Positions 8,605-60,460 are shown, counted from the first letter of the stretch. The stretch: 64,000 nt of DNA from Octopus sinensis (GCF_006345805.1 NC_043014.1:26598001-26662000), one strand, 5' to 3'. A program made the numbers and translations. Notes: generated by a model from the sequence alone, not told the origin.

Positions 8605-9899
8605 TTTTTTTCTTCTTTCAAATTTGCTTCCATTTCTTGCCGAGTGTCTTCCCGACTCCTAGGGCAAAGAAACTCATAGTATACATTGGTAGGCCATTAA
8701 ACCAAACTCAGTAGTTCGTTCATTTTTTTTTTTTTTTTTTTTAAATTTCAATTAAAATACATGAGCAGCAACAGTTCTCACATCGACAATGCTCTTCTCA
8801 ATACGTGTGATGTACCAGTTAAGACAATCTTTTGCAATTCTTGCAGGGATGGTAAGCCAGGGATCATTCTCATATAATTTTCGGTTCCCTTCTTGATCAT
8901 TCCTAGTGCTCCTACGATCACTGGTATTGTAACCGCCTTGAGATGCCACATTTTCTCAATTTCAATGAGTAGGTCTTTATATTTTCTGAGCTTGTCAAAC
9001 TCTTTCGCTGAGATATTATGATCACAGGGGATGCTCATGTCGATCAATAAGCAAACTTTATTGTTTTGGTCTTTCACAACAATATCTGGTTTATTGGCCT
9101 TGATGGTTCGGTCTGTATGTACTGGAAAGTCCCACATGGTTACATTTTCTCCTTCAGTTATAGCCTCAGGGTGGTGATTATACCACTTGTCGGCAGTTTT
9201 GATATTGTAATGCCGACTTATTAGCCAGTGGAGATATTGGCCAACTCTGTCATGTCTTAATTTATACTCCACTGGTGCTAAGACTTTACATCCAGAGATT
9301 AGGTGGTCCACTGTTTCAATCATGTCGTTGCAGAATCGGCATTTTGGGTCTGCTCCATTTTTCATCACATTGGCCTGGTAGTTCCGGGTTAATAGGCTTT
9401 GATCTTGAGCAGCCAGGATGAAACCTTCGCTCTCTGCTTTTAGCCCTGAGCTCCGTAACCACTGATGGGTTTGCTTCTGGTCAACATCAGCTTGTTTGCT
9501 GCGGGTCACATATTTGCCGTGTAGAGGTTTCTCCTCCCACCTATCAGCCAATTGCTCGTGCGCTTTTTTCATTGCCATCATTTTCACCTTCTTTGCAACA
9601 ATAGTTGCCGTACTTCCCTCGGGTTGTTCAGTTTGGGTATCCTGCACGAGATCAATAGCAAATGTTTTGCTTTCCTTTATGATAGAATGAAGCTTCTTTC
9701 GTCTCTCGTGATTTTCCACGAGCTTTAGCATCCAGTCATTCGATATTTCGAGATATTTGGCCAGTCCAATTGTGGTTGTTTTGTAAGCTAGTTCAAACTG
9801 GATCAGGCCTCGACCTCCTTGGGCTCTGGGAAGGTAAAGGCGATCTACGTCTGCCTTTGGGTGGTGCATTCTATTACAACTCAGCAGCTTGCGTATTTG
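8605..9899 (-). mobile_element. R4/Dong-like non-LTR retrotransposon, 3' portion (subfamily A); open frame 8778-9869
   Basis: DRLYLPRAQGGRGL, CCHC knuckle CRFC..ETVDHLISGC, RHD motif, restriction-like endonuclease NKPDIVV..LIDMSIPCD..K..KY, PVIVGALG; 3' UTR runs into (TAA)n. Confidence 0.85.
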
Positions 9900-15050: not shown

Positions 15051-15636
15051 AATTAGCTGTGCCCATTGACTTGTCATTGAAAACCACAGACTGATAGAAC
15101 ACATTACAAAGCAGTACAATCAAGTGTAAATGTCTTTCTGTCTCTCAAGGTTAACATTTTTTTAGACTATCCTATCTGAATCTGACGTAACATTCTTTCT
15201 TTAAGATTTCGATAAGAAAGTAATTAATTAGTTTGGCTTATATTTCATGTTAACGATAGATCAATTGCTTTCTTGAATTTTAGCTTTCCACATTATTGTG
15301 ATCTTAGCCAGATATGTACTGCAATCCCTTGCGTTTCATCCAATGAGTTCATATTTTAAAGGTTACTTGGCTAAATTTTCTTTGGCAATTCCTTCAAGAA
15401 TATAAAACTGCAGAGTGAAAACCAAAGCTTCTGTGAAGGTGTTTACTCTGTCAGAGAAATGCGGCGAAATTCCGTTTTAGAGCTACAGGACAGTGTGCTC
15501 CAGGATACATTACAACAACCACAACAACGTTAAAGTACAAGCATTAAGCACGTACTAAAGCGAATGGCTTCAGTCGTTCAATGCCTATATTTTCATTTAT
15601 CGATTTAAAACACATACAAGAGTTCCTGTCTATCAC

Positions 15637-15639
<3 letters not shown>

Positions 15640-15713
<74 letters not shown>

Positions 15714-15721
15714 TTATATAT

Positions 15722-15808
<87 letters not shown>

Positions 15809-15830
15809 CCTATCTGTCTGTCTGTCTGTC
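15640..15830. repeat. (TCTA)n microsatellite
   Basis: Direct reading. Confidence 0.95.
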
Positions 15831-16772
15831 AGACTATCTTGTCGGTCTATCTAGCTCAAATCTTTTACTTACCACAGTAAGGTATTCTAAAATAATATGT
15901 TATTCTGGAGTGTGACATGTGCATTATTCCTTAATAAATACTGATATTTTGGCTTCACAATAAGGTTATCTGTTGTCAAGCATCAGATCCATTCAATCCT
16001 GTTCTAGCTGTTCTATAATAAAAAAATGCTTTTGCCATGGCTATGTCGGCTCGTTTTTTTGTTTATGTTTGTCTGAGTCCTTCATTTCTAGTTTCAAAGA
16101 CGAAAGATTGCGGGTTGTTTGGTTACTTTGCTGCTATTCAAACAGGTCGAGCGACCGCTTGGAAGCTTTCCTCGATGGACCGAGCCACAGGAACGTATTA
16201 ACGCCTGCACTACTTGACAGGTATTTCTTTTTCGTTTACTTTATCGACTTAGAGAGAATGAATGTCTAAGGCAAGAGTTTCTTAATAGTTAATGTAACTA
16301 ACAAGGTTTGTGTAGCACTTTCTCTGTCTTTAAACTACAGATGGATAATGGGTTAAATAATTTGCAATATTTAGCTACAAACCGTTTAAGTTTGCTTTCA
16401 AATATTGCCACTAGGCTTGATTTGTATTTTGTCTATTCTGAATGATCGATAAAATAAGGTCCCAGTTAAGTCAGTTTAATCAATAATACCTCTGCTCCAA
16501 ATGCGTCGCCTAGTATATGTATGTGATTGACATGCATACATGCACACAGACACACATACACACACGCACACACACACGTACACATACACACACATGCATA
16601 TACAAATATATATTAATAAATATACAAAGCTTTACATAAGTAAATATGCGAATAAATTAATACAACTTCAATTAGACTTTTGTTTACTTAAATTTTCTTT
16701 ACATGATTTTTTTTTGTTTGTTTTGAATTTGCTTTGTTTTTATATATATTTTTTTCTTTTCATTCTTTCTAG

Positions 16773-17910
16773 ATTTAAGAAGCGTGGGCTGCTCATGATA
16801 GTTTCTTTGGTTGTCATATATGGATTTATTCGCATCTACGCCGGGAATTTAGATTTTAAACTAATAGTGCCTTCAAAGTTACCAAAGCATTATTCTTTTA
16901 TAACTACCACACAGCTACCACACACCAACTTTCATCGAGGACCGGGCTATTTTAAAACGTGTAAACCTCAATCGGATGTTGTTTTTTTAAAAGTACACAA
17001 AGCTGGGAGTACGACCGTGATGAATATATTACTTCGTTATGGATTATATCATAAACTCGTATTTGTTTTGCCGAAGCACGACAATTATATCAACAGACAA
17101 TCTGAGCTGGACGTCAGTAGAATCATTCCACCACCAAAGGGCAAACGTTACAATATTCTGTGTAACCATTCCGTCTACAACAGATCCGTATTCCATAGTT
17201 TATTTCCTCCTGGTACTTTCTACCTTGCTATCATCCGGCAACCATTTGAACAATTTAAATGGGCATTTACTTATTTCAATATGGCCCGAGTTGTAAAGCG
17301 CGTAAAAATTTCTTCAACCAATCCTATCCGAGATTACTTACAGATACGAAACAAAATTTCAATTCCGAAGTTTAGGAATTATGTCAATAATCTAATGGCG
17401 TACGATTTCGGAATCGCCCCGGAGAATTTTACGAATTACAAGGCAATTAAAAACTACATTGAAATTCTTGATAAAGATTTTGACTTAGTGATGATAATGG
17501 AGTATTTTGATGAATCTCTTATTCTACTTCGTAGATATCTTTGTTGGACCATGAAGGATATCGTTTCAATAAGATTAAACGCACGCAAGAGTGAAATCGA
17601 AACATCAATGGATGACTTTGAAAGACACAAAAATGTAACCATGGCAGATTATATGATATATGAACACTTTTTCGGGACCTTTTGGAAATTGGTCGCTTTA
17701 GAAGGACCTTCGTTCTTCAAAGAATTGAGTCACTATAAACAGATACGAAAAATAATCGAAGCGTTTTGCAAAGGTGAATCAAAAGAGAGAAAGGTTGTAA
17801 TTCCAAGTTCTCACTGGAATATGGCGTTTGAAATATCTAAAATAGAATGTGAACATATTGTTATTGAAGAATTAGCTTTTGTTGATATAATCAGAAAAGG
17901 TTACAAATAA
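16773..17910 (+). CDS. Galactose-3-O-sulfotransferase (galactosylceramide sulfotransferase-like), probable terminal coding exon
   Basis: N-terminal hydrophobic anchor; 5'-PSB motif VFLKVHKAGSTT; HSVY; RQPFEQF.WAFTYF; FDLVMIMEYFDESLILLRRYLCW; DYMIYEHF. Polypyrimidine tract plus AG at 16771-16772 suggests the exon start; in-frame ATG at 16795. The longer ORF from 16540 begins in microsatellite. Confidence 0.88.
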
Positions 17911-18787
17911 CAACACTCCAAACCGTCAGTTACCAGGTTCACCTTAAGTAACCTAGAGATTTAGTTAGTGATAACAGCAATGACTGCTGCTGATCTAGAT
18001 CTATCTACAATGATTCGATACAACAGCAATTATGATATAGATAAGTGAAAATTACCTACATTCCCATAATACAAAAATTGATATATGAAAATCCCTTTAA
18101 ATTAATTTCGATATTAAATAATAAGTTTAGATCTCTTTATAACAATGCCTTTTATGGACAGCCTTACTACATGCCTCAGGTCTGCCCATAGAGACACAGA
18201 CAAAAATGACCATATTCTTTCCCCAATAGAATAAGATGTGTGTATCTAAAGTCTGTGACACCTTAATGGACTAGCCTGATTAAATAATTAACTAAATAGA
18301 AAGTGGAAAGCAACTAACAAGAAATTAGCAAAAAAAAAAATGCAGAATGTAAGCTAATTTCTTGTTAGTTGCTTTCCACTTTCTATTTAGTTAATTATTT
18401 AATCAGGCTAGTCCATTAAGGTGTCACAGACTTTAGATACACACATCTTATTCTATTGGGGAAAGAATATGGTCATTTTTGTCTGTGTCTCTATGGGCAG
18501 ACCTGAGGCATGTAGTAAGGCTGTCCATAAAAGGCATTGTTATAAAGAGATCTAAACTTATTATTTAATATCGAAATTAATTTAAAGGGATTTTCATATA
18601 TCAATTTTTGTATTATGGGAATGTAGGTAATTTTCACTTATCTATATCATAATTGCTGTTGTATCGAATCATTGTTGATAGATCTAGATCAGCAGCAGTC
18701 ATTGCTGTTATCACTAACTAAATCTCTAGGTTACTTAAGGTGAACCTGGTAACTGACGGTTTGGAGTCTTGTTGTTTGTAACCTTTT
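17895..18787. repeat. Near-perfect inverted repeat: arms 17895-18329 and 18353-18787 (435 bp each), 23-bp spacer
   Basis: Base-by-base comparison; I found about 3 mismatches; the left arm includes the last codons and stop of the sulfotransferase. Confidence 0.95.
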
Positions 18788-19637
18788 GGTGAGACATGGT
18801 GCAACCTTCAAGACGGTAAAGTTCTCTGACATTAATTTGATGTGAATGGGTAATATCAGTAGCTATCGCTCTTTATAAATTTTCAATAAAGTAAAAGCTT
18901 GAAGTATTAATTGACACATTATCAGTTAGCACAATAGCTTAGCTTGGAAAAAATATGGATTGCATGGAAAATGCTAGCAAGATAAATAATATTCTTAATA
19001 TTATAAACCTGGAGAAGTACAGGACAAGTTATTACACTTAGAAAAGTTCAGGACAAGTTATTACATCTGGTAAAGTACAGAACAAAAACAATTTTACTTA
19101 AAATATTGCAGCTAAGGATAAAATTTGAATATTAAAAATGATTTTATTTTAATTTTAAAAAAGGTAGCATCATTTTGTTAAAATATTGACACACTAGAAT
19201 ACTTAAAAAATGAGAGCCAAAAGTACCAATATAGCTAAAGTTTTACGTAAAGTAGAATAGCATATATGGTAGGCAAATTCATTATGTGAAAAATAATCTT
19301 TATACTCGCCTCTCCCTTAACCTCTCTGAACAGGTGTATCTCTCGCTGTATTGTTTAGTATATATCTAATACAAAGTTCCTATCTAACTATCTTTCCTCC
19401 ATCAGATTTTACTTTCTCATCTCAGTATTTCTTCAACTTTTGAACTGCTAGCATCCATTTTCCTTCATTATGGATTACTATCTAAGTCTTCACTCTGATC
19501 ATGAATTTACCCAAAGAATACCCAATTTCACTGGATCTAACTGGGCTTAGTTGGATATCTCCTTCTCTGAAATTAAGGAATCACATCAACTAACAATTGA
19601 AGAGAAACTTTTATTCCACTGTTACATATGTTTAACA

Positions 19638-26560: not shown

Positions 26561-27602
26561 GATTTCTTTCATAACTATATCAGCTTTACTTTTACTAATA
26601 CCGAAACGCACACTTCCCCAAAGAAGAAGGATTTAAAAAGTAGACTTATATCTTACAAATTTAGAATGGAACAACATATCGAGAGCCACTTCCTATACAA
26701 GCAATAAAAGACTCTGTGACTCACGTACTACAGAGAATCCTTAAACAACGAAAGAATTTCTTTTTTGTATACATAAGTACCGGAAATTTACTGATACTTG
26801 AAACCCACAGACCACACTAGTCGATGGCAGTCATATGTGAATTAAAACCAGGTAATCAAATTCAACTATCATGACTTGAATAATATTTGTCACCAAATTT
26901 CACCCTCAAATGAACTTCTTCACTCTTCCTGACTCTCAAAATACGATAAGTTTTTTTTAACGATAATAGCTCGTTTGATGTTCATAATCTAGCAAGGATT
27001 TTCGGTATCCACAATTCATTCTCAACTATTGAAACTCACTTTTTATACACACCTCACCAATAATAGGAAATTTTCTCGGAAAACAATAGAAACCTAGTGG
27101 CCATATTAAAATAAACACGCGCTATTCCAACTTTATTTCCAAAACCTAAAGAGATCGTTCCCTTTTTTTTTTTTTTGATGAGTATAACCTCCCGTAGTCA
27201 AATATTGGAATCCTGACTACATCCAACTTACCTTGATTTATCTAGGATCTAATTTCTCCCTTATTTATCATTCACTTTAAAATTCACTAGCCTGTTCATT
27301 TCATTTTCAAATTACGTATATTTGCTCAACAATTATAATTTCTGTCTATTGCCACAAAGAAATTGTATGTAAGTATATATCTGGATATTTACAATCTCAT
27401 TATATATACATTCACACACACGCACACGGATACACACACTCACATATAATATGTGTGAGTGGTTTTGTTTAAAGTACATATGTTTAAAAGTATATGTGCG
27501 AATATATATATATATATATTATATATATATATATTGGTAAAACGGTAAGATAAGAAAAGAAAGAAAGAGACCTCAATATTATGTAAATAGAGGAAATTTA
27601 TC

Positions 27603-27829
27603 TATGCAATAATATGTTACATTACTCGATAGTCAAGATAAAACTCTGAGTTTCAGATGCCGAAGTAGGAATCTACGACATCTCTTCGGTTATCTGGCTA
27701 TTTGAAAACGCTATCTCATAGCGTTTTCAAATAGCCAGATAACCGAAGAGATGTCGTGGATTCCCACTTCGGCATCTGAAACTCAGAGTTTTATCTTGAC
27801 TATCGAGTAATGTAACATATTATTGTATA
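27603..27829. repeat. Near-perfect palindrome (112-bp arms, 3-nt loop) with a degenerate HHR in each arm
   Basis: AGAUAA-CCGAAGA-GAUGUCG..CGGCAUC-u-GAAAC-ucaga-GUU-UUAUCU at 27737-27796 (+), mirrored at about 27636-27695 (-). Confidence 0.85.
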
Positions 27830-27864
27830 TATATTATATATATATATAATATATATAATATATA

Positions 27865-29617
27865 TATATAGGTAAACAGTAAAATAAATACAGACATGGA
27901 CAAGAACATGAAACACCACAGAGACGACACAAGAACCACAGGACGGGACATTCGAAGCCCTCAGTCATCAGTCAAGAACCAGATCATCTTAGCAATTTCG
28001 GCTGATTAATCTTGAGATTGCTCCGATATGGCCAGCCCGCCAAGGGAAATCTAAGCCAAGCGCATTAGATCCCCTGGAAGAAAGCTTCGAATGTATACAA
28101 CGAAGGACGGAAAACGATCGAAGTACACAAACAAAAATACAGAATACGTGACACCAATAAGAATACAAAAACGTAAAAACAATAACGGTAAAAATAAAAA
28201 ATAAACAACAAAACAAAACCAGGACGTAGGACAAGGGTCTTTCGACAGGACGATTTGAGTAGGGGCTGGCTTGTGAAGTTGTGCCTAAAGGCCACGGGGA
28301 GACGAACAAAAACGTGTTGCTTCTGAGGCTGCTGAAAACGAAAAGAGCGCTCAACAGCGGCTAGCTGTCACGTGAGAACAAAAGACAGGAGAAAGGGACA
28401 GATGAAAAGGGAGAGAAGGTGGACGAGGGAGGAGAAGAAAGAGACAGATCGAGGGGGCTGGAGGTGAGAGAGATAGAGAAACGTAGAAAGGGGGGGGGAC
28501 GGATGGAGAGGGAAAGAACGGAAGTGGAATAAGGGAGGGAGAGAGAGAGAGAAAAAGAGACAGATTAAGAGTCGTATCAAAGCTTGAGAAAAAAATATAC
28601 TTATCGTATAAGGACAATTGTGGATACGTAGCCGCCGATTATATAGGTAAACAGTAAAATTAAATACAGACATGGACAAGAACATGAAACACCACAGAGA
28701 CGACACAAGAACCACAGGACGGGACATTCGAAGCCCTCAGTCATCAGTCAAGAACCAGATCATCTTAGCAATTTCGGCTGATTAATCTTGAGATTGCTCC
28801 GATATGGCCAGCCCGCCAAGGGAAATCTAAGCCAAGCGCATTAGATCCCCTGGAAGAAAGCTTCGAATGTATACAACGAAGGACGGAAAACGATCGAAGT
28901 ACACAAACAAAAATACAGAATACGTGACACCAATAAGAATACAAAAACGTAAAAACAATAACGGTAAAAATAAAAAATAAACAACAAAACAAAACCAGGA
29001 CGTAGGACAAGGGTCTTTCGACAGGACGATTTGAGTAGGGGCTGGCTTGTGAAGTTGTGCCTAAAGGCCACGGGGAGACGAACAAAAACGTGTTGCTTCT
29101 GAGGCTGCTGAAAACGAAAAGAGCGCTCAACAGCGGCTAGCTGTCACGTGAGAACAAAAGACAGGAGAAAGGGACAGATGAAAAGGGAGAGAAGGTGGAC
29201 GAGGGAGGAGAAGAAAGAGACAGATCGAGGGGGCTGGAGGTGAGAGAGATAGAGAAACGTAGAAAGGGGGGGGGACGGATGGAGAGGGAAAGAACGGAAG
29301 TGGAATAAGGGAGGAGGGAGAGAGAGAGAAAAAGAGACAGATTAAGAGTCGTATCAAAGCTTGAGAAAAAAATATACTTATCGTATAAGGACAATTGTGG
29401 ATACGTAGCCGCCGATTATATAGGTAAACAGTAAAATTAAATACAGACATGGACAAGAACATGAAACACCACAGAGACGACACAAGAACCACAGGACGGG
29501 ACATTCGAAGCCCTCAGTCATCAGTCAAGAACCAGATCATCTTAGCAATTTCGGCTGATTAATCTTGAGATTGCTCCGATATGGCCAGCCCGCCAAGGGA
29601 AATCTAAGCCAAGCGCA
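27865..29617 (-). mobile_element. Non-coding tandem array, about 2.25 units of 776-777 bp, each with a hammerhead-like motif (retrozyme-like)
   Basis: Units nearly identical; motifs at 27956-28022, 28732-28798 and 29509-29575; (TA)n on both flanks; no credible protein. Confidence 0.75.
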
Positions 29618-33260: not shown

Positions 33261-34509
33261 GATGAGTGTGTGCATATATATGTGCATGTGCGTATATGTG
33301 GGGCTGTTGGTATATGTACAGGTGTATGTATGTGTGTGCATGTATCTATATAAGTAGATATGCATGTATGTGTCTGTCCAGTCATCTGCTGTTGTTGAAT
33401 GTACCATTGATCCGACGTGATATAGATAAAAAATGCATGAAATTTTCTACATCCGGCCCTCATCTTAAAGTAACTGTGATGACAGACCTTTAATGTAGTT
33501 ATCTTTCGACTATAAATTGTAGGAATTACGGCTGAAATTGGACAGATGGTGGGGTGTCGTCGTCTTTGTGAGGGTGTATGTGCGGATGTGTGTGTATATG
33601 TGTGTATATATACCTATACGCATCCCAACCTAGGTTAGCATGTATACCAACCTCTTGCCCCCCCCCAGACATTTTCGCCTGCATATATATTTTTTCTTTC
33701 TTTTCTCTTTATTTTTCTAGTACCATTCCCTCGTCTTGAATTTAATGTAACTTAATCCCTCCTTTGTCCAACTCCTACTTACTTCTCCTGCATAGTTTTT
33801 CTTTTTTTCTTCTTTCTTGTCTACAGTTATGTTTATATTTACAAATGTTTACCGTTTTTGTGATGGTAATAGTAAGTTAATGGTAATGAAAATTGTAGCA
33901 ATGTTTCATTCCCTAATTCGACGGAAAACTAACAACATAAGCACCCAAACTCCAGATCTTTAGCGAGGCAATTCTTTATGTATGCATGTACCTTATTTGA
34001 CCCAGACTGCAAAATGAATGCAGCACAACATGTTGCACGGAATCCCACTCGTAACGAACAGTTGCTGGATGGGGCGAAACGATCATCGTATGAAATGAAG
34101 ACTAATACCAAATCCATCTTCTGGTTACTTAATCAATTATTATCATCTCAACTAACATTGCAGGATTCCAGTAGATCCAACAGAAATATACCCCAACTAT
34201 GGAGGAATCAGGTACTCAACACTTGACTACACTGATCGATATACACGCATTAGTCCAAAATATTACATATACACACTGTTGGGAAATTAAGGTTTTCTTA
34301 AAACTTATGCCTGTTTTGTGAGTATATTATGAAATAATATTATTATTGGGCAGTGTTACCTACACTGCATTATAAATTTTAACAGGTAAACAGACGGTTT
34401 TGCATGCTGTACTGTAAGGTCACGATGAAGTCCATTGTCAAAATGGGGAAAGTTAGGTAAATAGCCAAACTATGATGAGAAGACATACCTAAAACAAAAA
34501 TAATATATA

Positions 34510-34815
34510 GAAGCCAAAACAAGAAGAGTGCCATTGTTATCAAGTGAATGATATTTCAGCATCTAGTGTGCCTTCCACAGATTCAAAAAATAAACTTGTC
34601 AATCTAATTCATTTTTGGTAATGTTTTATAGGATTCAGGAAACTCCTCCAGTAGGTATACAGAAGCAAAAAATGAAGTAGATTGACAAGTATATTTTTGA
34701 ACCTGTGGAAGGCACACTAGATGCCGAAATATCGTTCACTTGATAACAATAGCACTTTTCTTTTATTTTTTGCTTCTGTATACCTACTGGAAGAGTTCTC
34801 TCAGTCCTATGAAAT
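34510..34815. repeat. Imperfect inverted pair carrying A6U-variant minimal HHRs (34545-34585 -, 34698-34738 +)
   Basis: UGAAC-CUGUGGA-A-GGCA(cacuaga)UGCC-GAAAU-AUC-GUUCA; the other arm has UGAAU/AUUCA. Confidence 0.65.
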
Positions 34816-34824
34816 AATAATAAT

Positions 34825-34857
<33 letters not shown>

Positions 34858-34867
34858 AATAATAATA

Positions 34868-34901
<34 letters not shown>

Positions 34902-34902
34902 C

Positions 34903-35325
34903 GGATCTTTTCGGTTTGAACGGCAGTTTTTTCTAGCGGTGTCATATGAAATTGTCACCCATAATTATGATCCTAGTATCGATCTATTGCATTTCAATCT
35001 GTTTTAGGGTTAGGGTTAGGGTTAGAAGTGGGAGGAAGGGTACCTTTTTTTCTTCACAAATGTAAATAAACCCAATCTGTTTCTTAAACGAGGGACATAT
35101 TCATACGGCACAGAATGTTTTTCACCTCAATAGACGTCAGTGATTGGCTGAAATTGCAGAAATTGAAGAAAAAAAAACAACAAATATCTTACAAACCATC
35201 GAATTTTCTCAATAAAGCCAAGAGAAAAAGATGTTTTATAAACACATTCTACCAGTATACGAAGTTTAAAATATTTTAGTTACCTAGAAATTATGTTAAA
35301 AACTGCCGTTCAAACCAAAAAGATC
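34903..35325. mobile_element. MITE with TIRs of about 28 bp, 8-bp TSD (TAATAATC) and internal (TTAGGG)n; possibly Merlin-like
   Basis: ggatcttttcggtttgaacggcagtttt vs aaaactgccgttcaaaccaaaagatcc; GG..CC termini. Confidence 0.65.
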
Positions 35326-35334
35326 CTAATAATC

Positions 35335-35490
35335 TTATAAGCACAAGGCCTGAGATTTGGCGACTCAGCTGGTACTTAATTTACCGGCCCCGAAAGGATG
35401 AAAGACAAAGTCGGTTTCGGCGGAATTTTTACTCAGAACGTAGCTACAGGCTAAATAACGATTCTGCCATCTCACCGCCTTCACCGCCTT
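35335..35490 (-). mobile_element. tRNA-derived SINE fragment
   Basis: ctggtacttaatttaccggccccgaaaggatgaaagacaaagtcgg..actcagaacgta. Confidence 0.7.
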
Positions 35491-35517
35491 AATAATAATA
35501 ATGACGATTATTATCTC

Positions 35518-35569
<52 letters not shown>

Positions 35570-38500
35570 TTCTTTATTGGTCGTAACGACAGAACTCAAA
35601 ACATACTGGACAATACACAGTGCATTTATATGTGTAAATAGCAAAACAACAATTAGCAAGGAAAATTACCCAACAATAGTGGCGAGATCCACTGAGTGGT
35701 GACCAAAGCAACCTCACCCACTTTGGGCTCCTAACACAAAGGCACCTGAAGTAGGCACCCCCTCCTCCTCACTCCATCCGGCCTACAGGCGCACACTTAG
35801 TGTAGGCCCATTCACACGAGCCATCCTTGCTACATTCACCCACCTTTCGACAAACTTACTGGGTGACAGCACCTCCCTCTCCAGTCTCACCTTCATATTC
35901 GCTTAGCCTAGCGCCGACCATCTCTGTTTCAGAGACATTCGACACTATCACGGTGACATCCTCTGCATACGCTAACACATCTCTTCCGCATACTAGCTCA
36001 CACGGGATGCTCCTCGAAGCATCCAGCTTCCTCAGTAATGGCTCGAGTACCAGTACGTATAGAAGGGATGAGAGTGGGTATCCCTGATGGACCGAACGGG
36101 CGATGCCAAACGATTCCGACAGGTGGCCATTTACTTTGACCAGCGAACAGATGTCGCTGGACATTGCAGCGATCCAGCCTCTGAAAACGAGATCGAAGCC
36201 AGTCGCTATATGAACAGCCTCCAAGTACCGACGGTCAACCCTATCGAAGGCTTTCGGCTGATCCAAATTGATCAGGTCCCCACCCATGCCAGGTTCCTTA
36301 TCAACCTTCTCCGTGGTTGTCATTCATAGATCTGTTGGGGATAGCGCAAGTCTACGCATAACCCACCAGTCTGGCCACGACAAGCGTCAACCTCTTTGCA
36401 AATATCTTGGCCAAAATTTGTAATCTACATTTAGCAGAGTTATGGGCCAAAATTTGTAATCTACATTTAGCAGAGTTATCAACAATGCCCCCCTTGTTCG
36501 GATCCTTTAGCAGTAGCGTCACCACACCTCTCCCGTTCTGCTGCCAGTTGCGGTAGACATCTACCAAAATCTCACCGAACAAGTCTGGCATATGAGTATA
36601 AAGTTCGAAGGGCAGACCATCCAATCCCGGAGACTTCGCCTTCGCGCAACTATCCAGTGCGTCACGTATATCTTCCGCTGTTATCGGCATTTCACAGAAC
36701 TCCACATCCCTGAACGAAAGCCGCGGCAGTCCATCAAGGGAAGAGATGAAGTTCACCTCCGCCTCCGAACCACCGCGCGCCTCTTACAAAGTGCCGCTGA
36801 AATTCTGTATAAATCTGCTTGGACTCGCGTAGCATGCGCCCGTCCCGACCCCTCAGAGGCCGAATTGTGGTTTTATTTCCACGTTGCTCCTCGGCAACCC
36901 GGGCCCATCGAACGGCTTTCATTCCCACGTGCCTTAAAGCACGTTATCTAGCTCTGACAATGCAACCTTCATACTTGGTGGTTCCGAACCAACCTCGCTG
37001 CCAGCACGTCGGTCACTGTGTCACTACTGAGTGCCTCTTCTAATTTCCTAACTAGTTCTCCCTCTACACTAGTATTCTTTATCCCTAATTCCCTGCTAAA
37101 TTCTACCGCTTCTACTCTAACCGCCCATTTTAGGGCTGCCCACCATCGGTTGTTGACGACTGCACGCATTAATTTTTGATAGACTAATTTACTAATCCAG
37201 TCTCTGAAAGTTTGGCGCACCGGGAAAGACGCATTTAGCTTCCAGTATCCGCGGCCCTGCCTATGGGGCCTACATAAGTCGACCATACAGATCATAAGTT
37301 TGTGAGCCGTATAGCTGCCAACTTCAAATTGTGGACAACCTATGCTATCCTTATCTGCTGGCCCACAAAATACCCTAGATAAGATCTGGATACCCAACGC
37401 TATTTGTCCACGTCCACACTGGAACATTCGGGATATCTAGTCTGAACCTGTTAGCCAATTGGAAACGATCGAGCAGGTTTGCGAGGCTTGCGCACCATCT
37501 TTTCTTATCGGCTAGCACCACCCAATCCATACGTGCATCCAAAATGACGTTCCAGTCTCCCACTTACACTAAGGAGCGAGACGTCCTAAGAAAGACCTCT
37601 GGCTGTCCCGCTCCGGTCGGTGCGTACACAGCGACCCGTCTGCCTTCGTTATCATTCGCGTCCAGGACCATTATCCTACCTTCCGGGTCCAAGGAGACCG
37701 ACCTATCTCGAGACCCAGGCCTTTTCCCGGGCAACTAAGAGATGCAAAGATCCCATAATCATCAAAAATGGGCGCTAAGTCTCATGAATTCGAGATCCTG
37801 GTCTCACTGGCAGCTATTACGTTTAATTTTCGCCACCTGAGATTATTGAGCAAGCGACCTTGCTTCCATGACGACCCCAAGCCGAATACATTTATACTGT
37901 CCACTCTAAACAAGACCATGTTTGACGATGGGAATGTGTAAAGGCTTTGTAGGGAAGTGGGAGTGCTTACTCTCTCCCTCACGTTGGATGCGAGGTTTTT
38001 CCCCCAGCAGTATCTTGTAAATTCTGATATTGAGGTTCATTTGAAAGACCCCTACAAACTGGGGATATCTAGATTTCAAAGTTTTGTAGTCGCTTTGAGT
38101 AGTTTTGAATATTTTTATGCGTGTCGGTATATTTATGGTTGGCGACATAAGTGGATTCATTAATATCCATATTTGTTGATGTGTTCTATTAATTCGTTAT
38201 TTTTTGTGCTTATAGCTGTAAGATTTATAATGTCTGGTTTATGATCATTTGGTGGAATGCAGTCCATCTGTTGTGTATGTAGGCTATGTTGTTTTTGTGA
38301 TGGTTGTGGAGATTGTGGTGGTAGTGGTGGGTATGATGCTATTGTTGCCTCTGTGTGTGTACTGTTGTTACTGTTCGTTTCCTCTTCCATTTTCTCGTGC
38401 CTGCCTGTCTTTTCTGGTCATCGTTTGTGCTCTTCCGTCTTTTCCATCATTTTCGTGTGACTGTTTGCAACGCTTGTCCCTCCTTATTTCCATAATTTTC

Positions 38501-47239: not shown

Positions 47240-50200
47240 TAGGTAACTCTCTGTTTTAAATTTTCCGGGTTCATAGGATTATGCTCAAGGTGGCTTCGTC
47301 ATTCATACGTGCCATCCTTGCTATATTCACTCATCTTTTTTTGAAACATTCGCTAGACAAAACTTCCCTCTCTACTCTCACTTTCCTTTTCAAGTGATAC
47401 TTGAAGAAGTTGATGAGAGATTGACCAGAGAGGAAAGGGTTTGTCTCCTTTCAGACGTGTCCACCAGATACATTCTTTCGCCATAGCCACAAGGCTTGTA
47501 AAAATAGCTCTTCCTTCCCGTTTGAAGGAAGGAGGCGTGATAATATTGACGATAGACTCGGCTAATAAACCGACTCGTCCCACAGGTGACAGCAGTCGTT
47601 CAACATAAGCCCACAGGTCGGAAATTGTTGGACACTACACGAATGCGTGCAGAACGGTTTCGTCGCTCTGACCGCATCTCAGGCAGGTCGGCCCCGTGTT
47701 TCTCGAGCCCTGCCTGTAGAGCTTATCCCGAACGGGTAGCGCTTCTCGGTGGCACTGCCAGGCCAGGGATCTCTGGAAGTTGTCCATGGGCCCTGGCCCG
47801 AAAGTCGTCCTGAACAGGCGGGTCAGGTATTCCTCGTCGACGTCCAGGTTCGCCCCGAGCTCGTCGTCGTACCTCCCCTCCACTAATCCCCTATAGAATG
47901 CTTTGGTTGTGTTGAAGCCACTCAAGGTCGACCCGGGACGGCATAGTTGCTTGAGAGCAACGCGACACTCGCGGCGCCATTCGACCTTGCTCGGCCTTTT
48001 TTTGATCCACGGCTGCAGTTCGGTCATGGATACGAGTTGCGGGAAAGCGTGCCTCACAAACGGCGACCACACCTGTTCACCGTCGTCTACGTAGAGCCTG
48101 AGATGTCACAGTCTCAACGCGTGTCTGCGCATCATCAACCACGACATGCCCAGTCCTCCTTTTAACGGGTGTTGACAGCAAATGGATCGCCTGACCATCG
48201 GGACGTATCCTTTCCACAAGAAGCAAAAGAGAATGCGTTCTAGTTTGGTGATGGTAGGGTCGGGACAAGGCACGACGGTCAGGCGGTAGTAGATGACGGA
48301 CGCGATGTACGAGTTCGTCACCTCCACCCGACCTTTTAGGGACAGTTTCCTCTCGGCCCATTGCCGGGCGAGAGTGACCACCTTACTCGGTATCACGTTC
48401 CAGTTTTTATCCATTTGAAGATCCAGACCAAACCAGACCCCGAGCAACTCGACCGGACCGTCGGTCCAGCGTCCCACGACGGAGGCGCTGATGGACGGCA
48501 TGGGTTTGCTTCTCCAGGTGCCGAGTCGCAAGCCCACTGATTTTTCCCGGTTGATTTTCGCTCCTGTCACCGCTTCGTAGTCTTTCAGTGTCTCGCCAAC
48601 CAGGTCGATGTGCTCGTGGCTAGACACTATAACGGTGACGTCGTCCGCGTATGCAGACACGCTCGTCCCGCATCCCAATTCTCGCGGGATACCTCTTAGA
48701 GTTGCCAGCTTCCGCAATAATAGCTCGAGAGTCAATACGTAGAGAAGCGACGAGAGGGGCCATCCTTGACGGACCGAACGTGCAATGTCGAAAGGTCTCG
48801 ATAGATGTCCATTTACGCGAATTACCGAGCGGATACCTCTGTACAAAGCGGCTATCTAACCGCGGAAAACAGAACCGAAACCAGCCGCTCTGAAGACAGC
48901 CTCCAAGTATCGATGGTCTACCCTATCGAAAGCTTTCGATTGATCCAAATTGATCAGCGCCCCACCCATGCCAGGTTCCTTAACTACCCTGTCTATGATG
49001 ATGCGCATCAGGTGGATGTTGTCATGAATGCTCCGGCCCGGCACGGCGCACGTTTGCGCCTTGTCGACCAGTTTCTCGATGACAAGCGCCAACCTCTTGG
49101 CTAACACCTTGGCCAAAATTTTCAAGTCTGCATTAAGCAGAGTGATGGGCCTAAAATTATCTATTACATCCCCCTTGTTTAGATCTTTCTTCATCAGTGT
49201 TACGGCTCCTCGGCTCACAAAACCAGGAATTCTCCCGTTTTGCTGCCAGTTGCAGTACAGCGCTGCCAAGACGTCTCCAAACAAATCTGACATACAAATG
49301 TAAAGCTCGTAGGGTAGACCATCCAAACCCGGCGATTTGTCCCTGGAGCATTCTGCCATCGCGAACTGCACTTCCTCCGCCGTGATGGCACCTTCGCACG
49401 CCCTACCTCTCTTGTCAAGAGTCGTGGTAGGCTGTGTAGGTAGGCACTGAAATCCACCCTACGTTCTTGCCCGCCACTCGTCCCGAACAGTCGGGCAAAA
49501 TGCTGTTGAAAAGCCTCACGCATTTTACTTGACTCGAGCAATTCGCGTCCCTGTTCATCTACCAGAGACCGAATGGTGGCTTTGTTGCCCTGTTGCGCCT
49601 CTGCTACCCGGGCCTCTCGCGCAGCTCCAACACCTTCGTTCATTAGAGCACGCATCCTAGCTCTGACAACACACCCTTCGTGTTTGGCGTTGAAGTGTTG
49701 ATCGAGGGCCAACCTCGCCGCCAAAACGTCGGATGCGATGCCGCTTCTAATTGCCTCTTCTAGCTTCTTAACTAGCTCACCCTCTACTGTTTCTATCTAT
49801 GGTTAGTGCTTTGCTGTACCTAATCGCTTCTGCTTTTACTGCTCTCTTGGGGGCAAATCACCATTTGTTGTTGATGATGGCTCCCGTCAAAGCCCTCTTT
49901 ACTAGTGTGCTAATCCGCTCTCTGAAAACCTGTCTCGATGGGAAAGACGCGTTTAGTTTCCAGTATCCAGGACCCTGCCTATGTGTCTTACCTAAGTCTA
50001 GCGTACATGTCACAAGTTTGTGATCCGTGTAGCTGACTATGTGGAATTGTGGACATCCTACGCTATCTCTATATACTGTCCTACACAGTATCCTATCTAG
50101 ATACGATCTCGACGACTCGATGCGGTCACTCCATGTCCACGTTGGCGCATTTAGGTGGTCGAGTCGGTACCTGAGAAGGTCTCTGAGGCATTTGCATCCC

Positions 50201-59392: not shown

Positions 59393-59451
59393 GCTATGTA
59401 TATATATATATATATATATACATATATATACATAGCTATATATATATATAT

Positions 59452-60125
59452 AACATAAGGGGGATCAGCCATCTGAATGTGGCTAGGGTCAGGGCGGGGT
59501 GGTGGGGGTGTTACTGATGCATTTAGCCCCAGGCGAACATCAACGTCACCAGAAGAGCTGACACCATCTCGGTGTCCTTGCCAGCCTGCAAAGGGAGATC
59601 AGCCTCCCCGAAGATACGGATACTACACACGGACCGGTTTCGAGGTTATTGCCTCTTGTCAACCTATGGTAAGCACCGCTCTTCGTTGAGGGACTCTCTC
59701 TACAGGTTGGATATATAGATTTTCACAGTAACCACAGTCACTGGCGTAGAAAATCCGTTCGAAAACAATAATAAATCTCTGAGCGAGATATAAACAGTAA
59801 CTGCTCTACAACATAAGGGGGATCAGCCATCTGAATGTGGCTAGGGTCAGGGCGGGGTGGTTACCATACGTTGACAAGAGGCAATAACCTCGAAACCGGT
59901 CCGTGTGTAGTATCCGTATCTTCGGGGAGGCTGATCTCCCTTTGCAGGCTGGCAAGGACACCGAGATGGTGTCAGCTCTTCTGGTGACGTTGATGTTCGC
60001 CTGGGGCTAAATGCATCAGTAACACCCCCACCACCCCGCCCTGACCCTAGCCACATTCAGATGGCTGATCCCCCTTATGTTGTAGAGCAGTTACTGTTTA
60101 TATCTCGCTCCGAGATTTATTATTG
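59452..60125. mobile_element. Non-coding rearranged inverted element with two U3-A8 HHRs
   Basis: Block order A-B-C-A-revB-revA-revC'; flanked by (TA)n. Confidence 0.7.
59865..59907 (+). ncRNA. Minimal hammerhead with U3-A8 core; twin at 59626-59668 (-)
   Basis: CAUACG-UUGACAA-GAGG(caauaa)CCUC-GAAAC-CG-GUC-CGUGUG; palindromic ACCGGU helix III. Confidence 0.7.
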
Positions 60126-60152
60126 TATATATATATATATATATATATATAG

Positions 60153-60187
<35 letters not shown>

Positions 60188-60231
60188 AGAACAAGATGTA
60201 CGTTACGCCACAATAATATATGTATAAAAAA

Positions 60232-60460
60232 TATATATAAAAATACAAAATGGGACAAGAAAGCAAAACACTCAAAGAGACGACACAAAAATCGGACGGG
60301 TCATTCGAAGCCGCTAATCTTCAGTCAAGAGCCGAAATTGCGAGGATGATCCGGTTCTTGACTGAAGATAAGAGGCTTCGAATGACCCGTCCGTTTTTTG
60401 TGTCGTTTCTTTGAGTGTTTTGCGTTCTTGTCCCATTTTGTATTTTTATATATATCATTT
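60232..60460. repeat. Inverted pair (arms of about 100 bp) of the reversed-order HHR family, partial motifs
   Basis: agcc-gaaa-ttgc..tcttga-ctgaaga-taaga-ggct-tcgaatgac (+); mirror arm tcttga-ctgaaga-ttagc-ggct. Confidence 0.75.

What the first reader, a model, noticed from the sequence alone, without database searches (positions are those of the whole stretch)
17895..18787. 435-bp near-perfect hairpin built from the host gene's own stop codon and 3' UTR
Seen: the arms are not recognisable TE sequence, begin inside the last codons (..RKGYK*) and differ at only about 3 sites. A read-through transcript would fold into ~435 bp of dsRNA covering the stop codon. Established: long dsRNA is a substrate for ADAR (very active in coleoids) and Dicer. 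Inference: a possible cis-regulatory hairpin or endo-siRNA source acting on this gene or its paralogs.
Basis: partly seen in the sequence, partly recalled or inferred. Interest (0 to 1): 0.7.

Follow-up and report, generated by a model that had tools for sequence, protein, structure and literature searches.

The report
Inverted duplication rewrote a gene's end
The 435-bp hairpin is really in the Octopus sinensis assembly, but it is a young mutational scar: a backwards copy of nearby downstream DNA replaced the last five codons, stop and 3' flank of a recently duplicated sulfotransferase gene, with no evidence yet that it regulates anything.

Summary
Arms 17895-18329 and 18353-18787 are 435 nt with 3 mismatches and a 23-nt loop; the predicted RNA fold is -760 kcal/mol.

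The window is Octopus sinensis CM016876.1. The host ORF is exon 2 of XP_029647236.1, a Gal-3-O-sulfotransferase family gene.

Its paralogue (O. sinensis, O. vulgaris) and the O. bimaculoides and Argonauta genes end ...IIRK(F/L)QYP(I/K)*. Homology to the paralogue stops at 17898.

O. bimaculoides has one copy of the arm, about 3 kb past its stop, in right-arm orientation. It runs straight into the window's post-hairpin sequence. So the right arm is native. The left arm plus loop is an inverted copy that replaced about 3-4 kb, with 4-nt and 1-nt junction microhomologies.

All three arm differences are derived in the left arm, and one (C>T at 17908) created the present TAA stop.

Best explanation: a replication template-switch event (inverted duplication plus deletion) in a young paralogue evolving at dN/dS about 1 or higher. 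An endo-siRNA role is unlikely in molluscs. ADAR editing is possible but untested. An assembly artefact is not excluded.

The parts
16773..17910 (+). Exon 2 (all but the first ~7 codons) of the Gal-3-O-sulfotransferase-like gene XP_029647236.1. The ATG of the MIVSL start is at 16795.
   Evidence: Pfam PF06990, E=1.2e-54. The translation is 100% identical to P0122 / XP_029647236.1, including the GYK* end. The acceptor ...TTTCTAG|ATTTAAG is conserved with O. bimaculoides. The exon start is inferred.
17895..17898 (.). Junction 1: AAAA microhomology shared by the ancestral gene (…ATCAGAAAA) and the donor (…TCACCAAAA|GGTTAC). Homology to the paralogue and to O. bimaculoides ends after 17898.
17895..18329 (+). 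Left arm: derived, reverse-complement copy of the native downstream segment X. It supplies codons G369-Y370-K371 and the stop.
   Evidence: It matches O. bimaculoides L003 37281-36827 on the minus strand only. It carries all three derived substitutions.
17908..17910 (+). Present TAA stop codon. It was created by C>T at 17908; the right arm and O. bimaculoides have the equivalent of CAA. Without this change the ORF would run 18 codons further (…GYKQQDSKPSVTRFTLSNLEI*).
18330..18352 (+). Loop: the 23 nt that natively lie just upstream of X. They are present only in inverted orientation, contiguous with the left arm.
   Evidence: The reverse complement TTACATTCTGCATTTTTTTTTTT aligns with the paralogue (L001 15150-15168) and with O. 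bimaculoides upstream of X.
18353..18787 (+). Right arm: the native copy of X in its ancestral place and orientation. G18353 is the 1-nt microhomology of junction 2.
   Evidence: Window 18354-19295 is collinear with O. bimaculoides L003 36840-37807 (87%), straight across the arm boundary at 18787/18788. X is single-copy and plus-strand only in the 43.8-kb O. bimaculoides locus.
18788..19295 (+). Native downstream flank (D), collinear with the outgroup. It contains the first canonical AATAAA after the ORF, at 18885-18890.
18113..18118 (+). ATTAAA variant poly(A) signal inside the left arm (a second one is at 18279-18284). These are possible early 3' ends that would prevent hairpin formation.
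   Evidence: This is a motif match only.

Best explanation
The palindrome is the product of a structural mutation, most simply one replication template-switch event (FoSTeS/MMBIR type; order 1-3-4-2 in the four-point notation). It occurred in the O. sinensis lineage, in one copy of a recently duplicated Gal-3-O-sulfotransferase gene. The ancestral order was: gene end (…IIRK-F/L-Q-Y-P-I-stop), about 3-4 kb of spacer, a 23-nt segment, X (435 nt), then the downstream flank. Synthesis left the template after …AGAAAA (codon 368) and re-primed on the opposite strand at the TTTT that ends X. It copied X and the 23 nt backwards (458 nt), then returned to the start of X. The net result is loss of the last five codons, the stop, the 3' flank and the spacer, and gain of an inverted copy abutting its source. 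That gives a 435-bp palindrome with a 23-nt loop. The new copy then acquired three substitutions, either later or during error-prone synthesis. One of them created the current stop codon. Shown: the structure, the polarity, the junctions and the derived state. Inferred: the replicative mechanism, that it was one event rather than two, and the consequences. Most likely consequence: a neutral to mildly harmful lesion in a redundant paralogue under relaxed constraint. If transcription runs through to the AATAAA at 18885, the mRNA would carry a long 3' duplex. In a coleoid that duplex would more likely be ADAR-edited, retained or destabilised than diced into siRNAs.
For: (1) Orthologues and the paralogue end …IIRK(F/L)QYP(I/K)*, while the window ends IIRKGYK*. 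(2) The 97%-identical alignment to the paralogous locus ends at 17898, exactly at the arm boundary. (3) In O. bimaculoides X is single-copy, plus-strand, about 3 kb past an intact stop, and continuous with the window's post-arm sequence. The left arm matches it only in reverse. (4) The loop is native upstream sequence attached to the inverted copy. (5) Microhomology is 4 nt (AAAA, within the homeologous TCA-G-AAAA / TCA-CC-AAAA) at junction 1 and 1 nt at junction 2. (6) The right arm differs from the outgroup at 48/429 sites and the left arm at 51/429, so all three arm differences are left-arm-derived. They lie 10, 16 and 108 nt from junction 1. BIR/MMBIR synthesis is described as error-prone (PMC4352052). 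(7) The paralogue in O. sinensis and O. vulgaris keeps the ancestral order: gene, 4 kb, 23 nt, then the first 133 nt of X. (8) Template switching is documented to create perfect hairpins in a single event (PMC5453318, PMC10710096). (9) Window copy versus paralogue: 23 nonsynonymous to 4 synonymous differences, omega 1.2-1.5.
Against: Only one assembly of this locus could be examined, and no reads or second individual. The O. vulgaris orthologue of this particular copy is not annotated and could not be fetched. A two-step history gives the same end state: a longer inverted duplication first, then a deletion trimming it back to codon 368. Documented short-range template-switch mutations are tens of bp, whereas this copy is 458 nt with a 3-4 kb jump. 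The O. bimaculoides locus has an N gap (34186-35948) between its stop and X. The clustering of the three substitutions is post hoc (P about 0.017) and rests on n=3.
Confidence: 0.75

Rival explanations
1. Assembly artefact: the palindrome and the truncated gene end do not exist in the animal and come from chimeric or fold-back long reads, or from mis-polishing of the PacBio-based O. sinensis assembly.
For: There is one assembly only. Several other near-perfect short-spacer palindromes occur in the same 64 kb. The O. sinensis assembly shows more duplicated BUSCOs than other octopus assemblies (5.2% versus 0.5%; PMC10700109).
Against: A fold-back or missed-adapter read gives symmetric flanks and arms as long as the read. 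Here both outer flanks are unique and each is collinear with relatives. The loop is native genomic sequence, not an adapter. Two separate microhomology junctions within 900 bp, plus three arm differences, are not what a consensus of many reads would produce from a rare chimera. RefSeq built a gene model ending in GYK* on it.
Confidence: 0.1
2. Functional RNA hairpin: the duplex is transcribed as the 3' UTR and acts in cis (ADAR hyper-editing, nuclear retention, stop-codon masking) or in trans (small RNAs) on this gene or its paralogue. It is compatible with the mutational origin given above.
For: The first canonical AATAAA after the ORF is at 18885, 98 nt past the right arm, and the native 3' flank is gone. 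The duplex is extremely stable. The paralogue carries 133 nt of X about 4 kb past its stop. Coleoids edit RNA heavily (general knowledge).
Against: There is no conservation: the hairpin is absent from O. bimaculoides and from the paralogous locus in two species. There are no compensatory changes: the three differences give one G·U pair and two mismatches. Molluscs showed no evidence of endo-siRNAs (PMC12479628). ATTAAA signals in the left arm may end transcripts early. The arms share only 16 nt with any CDS. All Rfam hits are below gathering scores. The host copy evolves at omega about 1 or higher.
Confidence: 0.12
3. Foldback or MITE-type transposon inserted at the end of the gene.
For: The overall shape fits: long terminal inverted repeats with a short loop. 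Other palindromes in the window sit in (TA)n tracts.
Against: There is no target-site duplication. No other copy exists in the window or in three related loci. The right arm and its flank are in place in the outgroup, so there is no 'empty site'. About 3-4 kb of ancestral sequence is missing rather than interrupted.
Confidence: 0.02

Closest known systems
Template-switch mutations (four-point model; Löytynoja & Goldman 2017, PMC5453318; Mönttinen et al. 2022/2023, PMC8794818 and PMC10710096)
   Same: An interval is replaced by the reverse complement of adjacent sequence. This creates a perfect inverted repeat, and hence an RNA hairpin, in one step at a site with no pre-existing repeat. The flanks stay collinear, and point mutations accumulate later.
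   Different: Scale: a 458-nt copy and a 3-4 kb replaced interval, against tens of bp in the described sets. It also rewrites the end of a CDS rather than producing a miRNA-sized hairpin.
FoSTeS/MMBIR complex rearrangements (deletion or duplication with inverted segments) in human genomic disorders, e.g. PLP1 (PMC4352052)
   Same: Inverted duplication next to lost sequence, 1-4 nt microhomology or homeology at the junctions, and nearby point mutations attributed to low-fidelity synthesis.
   Different: Those events span kb to Mb and are seen de novo in patients. This one is sub-kb and was found in a reference genome. The replicative mechanism is inferred here, not observed.
Drosophila hairpin-RNA (hpRNA) loci and plant proto-MIRNA genes born by inverted duplication (e.g. 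PMC10317233, PMC10292708)
   Same: A young, near-perfect inverted repeat of several hundred bp, next to or derived from genic DNA, capable of forming long dsRNA.
   Different: hpRNA arms derive from the target gene's transcribed sequence and yield Dicer-2/AGO2 siRNAs. Here the arms come from downstream non-coding DNA, no small RNAs are known, and molluscs show no evidence of an endo-siRNA pathway (PMC12479628).
ADAR-edited inverted repeats in 3' UTRs (inverted Alu pairs in mammals, 3' UTR hairpins in C. elegans; general knowledge)
   Same: A potential intramolecular duplex of more than 100 bp downstream of a stop codon.
   Different: It is not transposon-derived, the duplex includes the stop codon itself, and neither transcription nor editing has been tested.

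Membership tests
Template-switch / FoSTeS-MMBIR inverted duplication-deletion | The novel segment is the reverse complement of nearby sequence that is still present at its native site | tested here: met
   Left arm plus loop is the reverse complement of the 23 nt plus X. The right arm is in its native place, shown by the outgroup.
Template-switch / FoSTeS-MMBIR inverted duplication-deletion | Both outer flanks are collinear with the ancestral sequence | tested here: met
   The gene up to 17898 matches the paralogue and O. bimaculoides. 18354-19295 matches O. bimaculoides 36840-37807.
Template-switch / FoSTeS-MMBIR inverted duplication-deletion | Microhomology at the switch points | tested here: met
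   AAAA at junction 1 and G at junction 2.
Template-switch / FoSTeS-MMBIR inverted duplication-deletion | Arose in a single replication event | not testable with these tools
   A two-step history (inverted duplication, then deletion) gives the same sequence. Only parsimony favours one event.
Short-range template-switch mutation as catalogued in primates | Event confined to tens of base pairs | tested here: not met
   458-nt copy and a replaced interval of about 3.0 kb (O. bimaculoides, including an N gap) to 4.07 kb (paralogue).
Foldback / MITE transposon | Target-site duplication and multiple dispersed copies | tested here: not met
   The flanks are …ATCAG and GGTGAG…, with no duplication. 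There are no other copies in 64 kb plus three loci. A genome-wide census was not possible.
Foldback / MITE transposon | Whole element absent from the orthologous or paralogous 'empty' site | tested here: not met
   One arm is present at the homologous position in O. bimaculoides, and partly in the paralogue.
hpRNA / endo-siRNA locus | Long inverted repeat able to form several hundred bp of duplex | tested here: met
hpRNA / endo-siRNA locus | Transcribed and processed into about 21-nt Dicer products; arms homologous to a target mRNA | not testable with these tools
   No RNA data were available. The arms share 16 nt with the gene's own CDS and 133 nt with DNA 4 kb past the paralogue's stop. The literature reports no mollusc endo-siRNAs.
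ADAR hyper-editing substrate | Clustered A-to-G differences between RNA and genome over the duplex | not testable with these tools
   This needs RNA-seq from O. sinensis.
Known RNA families (Rfam 15, incl. miRNA precursors) | Score at or above the family gathering threshold | tested here: not met
   The best hit is MIR6024 at 45.8 bits against a threshold of 72. All hits sit at the palindrome centre and are generic hairpin matches.
Fold-back chimeric-read assembly artefact | Symmetric flanks or read-length arms, with adapter or no native sequence at the turn | tested here: not met
   The flanks are unique and collinear on both sides, and the loop is native sequence. The reads themselves were not available.
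Galactose-3-O-sulfotransferase family (host gene) | PF06990 domain above the gathering score; intact ORF | tested here: met
   186 bits against a cut-off of 27. There are no internal stops in 368 shared codons. The conserved octopod C-terminal (F/L)QYP(I/K) is missing.

The most novel reading that the evidence does not exclude
The hairpin is transcribed as the only available 3' UTR of this paralogue. It would then act as a built-in dsRNA switch: heavy ADAR editing or duplex-dependent retention that silences or tunes one copy of a newly duplicated gene. This would be a case of a large template-switch event creating a regulatory RNA structure and a new stop codon together, in an animal lineage known for RNA editing.
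Probability: 0.1. Interest if true: 0.6.

Novelty: new member of a known kind. Interest (0 to 1): 0.33.

Why it matters
This is an unusually clean, fully polarised example of an inverted duplication-deletion event. Outgroup, paralogue and both junctions are resolved to the base. The event is an order of magnitude larger than the template-switch mutations catalogued in primates. It simultaneously removed a conserved C-terminus, supplied new codons, and was followed by a point change that made a new stop. It shows how a long perfect hairpin can appear at a gene's 3' end in one step, giving raw material for dsRNA-based regulation in a heavily editing lineage. It also warns that 'a hairpin built from the gene's own 3' UTR' can be the reverse of what happened. 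As it stands it is a mutational curiosity, not a demonstrated regulatory element.

Tried and rejected
(1) I first treated L001 (P0001) as the orthologue from another species. This was rejected when P0122 proved 100% identical to the window protein and L004 proved to be the same DNA. L001 is a paralogue about 95 kb away on the opposite strand.

(2) Transposon hypothesis: BLAST of the arm against the window and loci, and inspection for a target-site duplication, found nothing.

(3) Known RNA family: only sub-threshold generic hairpin hits.

(4) Independent confirmation in O. vulgaris: only the orthologue of the other paralogue is annotated (P0121/L002). No annotated gene lies within 10 kb of the palindrome in O. 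sinensis, so the O. vulgaris counterpart could not be fetched. P0002 was not on record.

(5) A Pol-theta-type snap-back on the right-hand break end was considered. It predicts the loop in native orientation relative to the right arm, which is the opposite of what is seen (reasoning).

(6) A literature search for the gene accessions found nothing.

(7) L003 and L004 were not exposed to scripts. Parts of L003 were transcribed for BLAST and MAFFT.

(8) I ran no further search on transposon ORFs as a route to the O. vulgaris locus, because the chance of an annotated orthologous copy was low.

Full report
**1. The observation**

- Arms 17895-18329 and 18353-18787 are 435 nt each, with a 23-nt spacer.
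- A direct comparison finds three mismatches, at 17908/18774, 17914/18768 and 18006/18676. Complementarity ends abruptly at both outer ends.
- It is the longest inverted repeat in the window.
- As RNA it folds into one uninterrupted stem of -759.9 kcal/mol. Shuffled sequences give -191 +/- 8 (z = -72).
- The arm has no further copy in the 64 kb.
- Rfam gives only sub-threshold, generic hairpin hits at the centre.

**2. The host gene and the source of the window**

- ORF 16540-17910 carries a Gal-3-O-sulfotransferase domain (PF06990, 186 bits).
- The translation from the MIVSL methionine (16795) is 100% identical to Octopus sinensis XP_029647236.1 (P0122), including the ending …IIRKGYK*.
- That protein's locus (L004) is the same DNA as the window. 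The window is therefore CM016876.1:26,598,001-26,662,000 of assembly GCA_006345805.1.
- The gene has a small first exon about 22 kb upstream. Exon 2 begins at about 16773, after a conserved acceptor.

**3. The gene end is not ancestral**

- The closest relatives all end …IIRK(F/L)QYP(I/K)*. They are a second O. sinensis gene (P0001), its O. vulgaris orthologue (P0121), the single O. bimaculoides gene (P0002/P0123) and Argonauta hians (P0003).
- At the DNA level the paralogous locus L001 aligns at 97% from window 15238 to 17898 and then stops.
  - L001 lies about 95 kb away on the opposite strand.
  - Its O. vulgaris orthologue L002 is 98.5-99% identical to it.
- The sequences read …ATCAGAAAA|TTCCAGTATCCTATATGA in the paralogue and …ATCAGAAAA|GGTTACAAATAA in the window.
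- So the left arm is not 'the gene's own stop codon and 3' UTR'. It is foreign to the ancestral gene end.

**4. Where the arms come from**

In O. bimaculoides (L003):
- The stop codon at 33797 is followed about 3 kb later by a single copy of the arm. An N gap lies in between.
- That copy is in right-arm orientation and runs without a break into the sequence that follows the right arm in the window.
- Window 18354-19295 matches L003 36840-37807 at 87% on the plus strand. Window 17895-18341 matches the same L003 segment only in reverse.
- Two conserved probes confirm one plus-strand copy in the whole 43.8-kb O. bimaculoides locus, against one copy on each strand in O. sinensis.

In the paralogue (both species):
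- The ancestral order is kept: gene, about 4 kb, the 23-nt segment, then the first 133 nt of X.
- After that a reverse-transcriptase-bearing insertion interrupts X.

From the multiple alignment:
- The 23-nt loop is the native sequence immediately upstream of X.
- In the window it is attached to the left arm in inverted orientation.

The resulting picture:
- Ancestral: G(stop) – A(3-4 kb) – l' – X – D.
- Window: G(minus five codons) – X' – l – X – D.
- The right arm is native. The left arm plus loop is a 458-nt reverse-complement copy that replaced G's end, A and l'.

**5. Junctions and polarity of the arm differences**

- Junction 1 has 4 nt of microhomology (AAAA, 17895-17898). It sits within a longer homeology, TCA-G-AAAA in the recipient against TCA-CC-AAAA in the donor.
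- Junction 2 has 1 nt of microhomology (G18353).
- Over X the right arm differs from O. bimaculoides at 48 of 429 aligned sites and the left arm at 51 of 429. At all three arm mismatches the right arm has the outgroup base.
- All three changes are therefore derived in the new copy, 10, 16 and 108 nt from junction 1.
- The first (C>T at 17908) converts CAA to the present TAA stop. Without it the ORF would continue for 18 more codons.
- The clustering near the junction has a post-hoc P of about 0.017. It fits the reported low fidelity of BIR/MMBIR synthesis (PMC4352052), but with n=3 it is only suggestive.
- None of the three changes is compensated on the other arm.

**6. Mechanism**

- The simplest account is one template-switch event. 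In the four-point model (PMC5453318) the switch points fall in the order 1-3-4-2 along the ancestral sequence.
- Template switching is documented to create perfect hairpins de novo in one step (PMC10710096). The catalogued events are tens of bp, so this one is closer in scale to FoSTeS/MMBIR rearrangements.
- A two-step history cannot be excluded: a longer inverted duplication, later trimmed by a microhomology-mediated deletion.
- A snap-back fill-in on the right-hand break end is disfavoured. It predicts the loop in native orientation relative to the right arm.

**7. Timing (rough, inferred)**

- The published splits are about 34 My for O. bimaculoides and about 2.5 My for sinensis/vulgaris (PMC10700109).

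| Comparison | Differences | Divergence |
|---|---|---|
| X, window right arm vs O. bimaculoides | 48/429 | 11.2% |
| X, window vs paralogue | 4/123 | 3.3% |
| Left arm vs right arm | 3/435 | 0.7% |

- These figures put the gene duplication at the order of 10 My. The palindrome would be at most about 2 My old, and younger if the three changes arose during the event.
- Whether O. vulgaris shares the palindrome is therefore an open and informative question.

**8. State of the gene**

- Both paralogues keep open frames.
- They differ by 23 nonsynonymous and 4 synonymous changes (omega 1.2-1.5). By parsimony at least 9 nonsynonymous and 2 synonymous fall on the window branch.
- The other copy shows 1 nonsynonymous and 3 synonymous changes between O. 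sinensis and O. vulgaris.
- The window copy has lost a C-terminal motif conserved from Octopus to Argonauta.
- This fits relaxed constraint or divergence after duplication. It gives no sign that the new 3' end is under selection.

**9. What the hairpin might do**

- The native 3' flank is gone. It includes an AATAAA about 200 nt past the stop in the paralogue.
- The next signals are ATTAAA at 18113 and 18279, inside the left arm, and AATAAA at 18885, 98 nt beyond the right arm.
- Only read-through to the AATAAA at 18885 would produce the duplex.
- A survey of 32 molluscs, including O. bimaculoides, found no evidence of endo-siRNAs and suggested editing as the fate of long dsRNA (PMC12479628).
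- The hairpin is absent from the outgroup and from the paralogous loci, so it has no evolutionary conservation.
- I therefore rate a regulatory role as possible but unsupported, at about 0.1.

**10. Artefact question**

- I could not inspect reads or a second assembly of this locus.
- These points argue for a real variant:
  - The flanks are unique and collinear on both sides.
  - The loop is native sequence.
  - There are two microhomology junctions.
  - The arms differ at three sites.
- I give about 0.1 to an artefact.
- Several other near-perfect palindromes in the window deserve the same test.

**11. Verdict**

The direction of derivation is reversed, and the small-RNA idea is unlikely.
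- The feature is a new, unusually large and well-resolved member of a known class of mutation. It is not a demonstrated regulatory element.

Noticed in passing
window 27599-27833: Another near-perfect palindrome: 116-nt arms, 97% complementary, 3-nt spacer, abutting a (TA)n tract. No other copy was found in the window or the fetched loci.
   Followed up: partly
window 59449-60126: A nested palindromic complex. Arms 59449-59677/59856-60084 (229 nt, 99%) overlap a second pair, 59765-59861/60030-60126 (97 nt, 99%). There is also a direct copy of 59449-59503 at 59807-59861. The complex is flanked by (TA)n. It could be a foldback element or another template-switch product.
   Followed up: partly
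window 60226-60460 and 27886-29533: A palindrome with 109-nt arms (93-94%, 17-nt spacer). Its arm is 77% similar to three units spaced about 777 bp apart at 27886, 28662 and 29439, which suggests a tandem repeat family.
   Followed up: no
window 16795-17898 vs L001 10001-11104: The host gene is one of two inverted paralogues about 95 kb apart on the same chromosome. They differ by 23 nonsynonymous and only 4 synonymous changes (omega 1.2-1.5). The other copy is conserved between O. sinensis and O. vulgaris (1 nonsynonymous, 3 synonymous). O. bimaculoides appears to have a single gene.
   Followed up: partly
L001 11369-11470 and L002 11142-11243: The paralogue carries a copy of a CDS segment (window 17257-17359), about 100 nt long and 82-83% identical, about 250 nt downstream of its own stop codon.
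   Followed up: no
L001 15292-19230 (likewise L002): In the paralogous locus the native segment X is cut after 133 nt by an insertion of about 3.9 kb. The insertion encodes reverse-transcriptase-like sequence (…DQSKAFD…). The outer 300 nt of X are absent there.
   Followed up: partly
window 18461-18585 vs L003 36599-36731: Part of X is 73% similar to sequence just upstream of X in O. bimaculoides. This points to an older direct repeat in the ancestral downstream region.
   Followed up: no
window 8778-9869 (-), 35856-37427 (-), 48106-49724 (-): Several retroelement-like ORFs with reverse-transcriptase-type motifs lie around the gene. One is intact at 363 aa. None is annotated as a gene within L004.
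   Followed up: no
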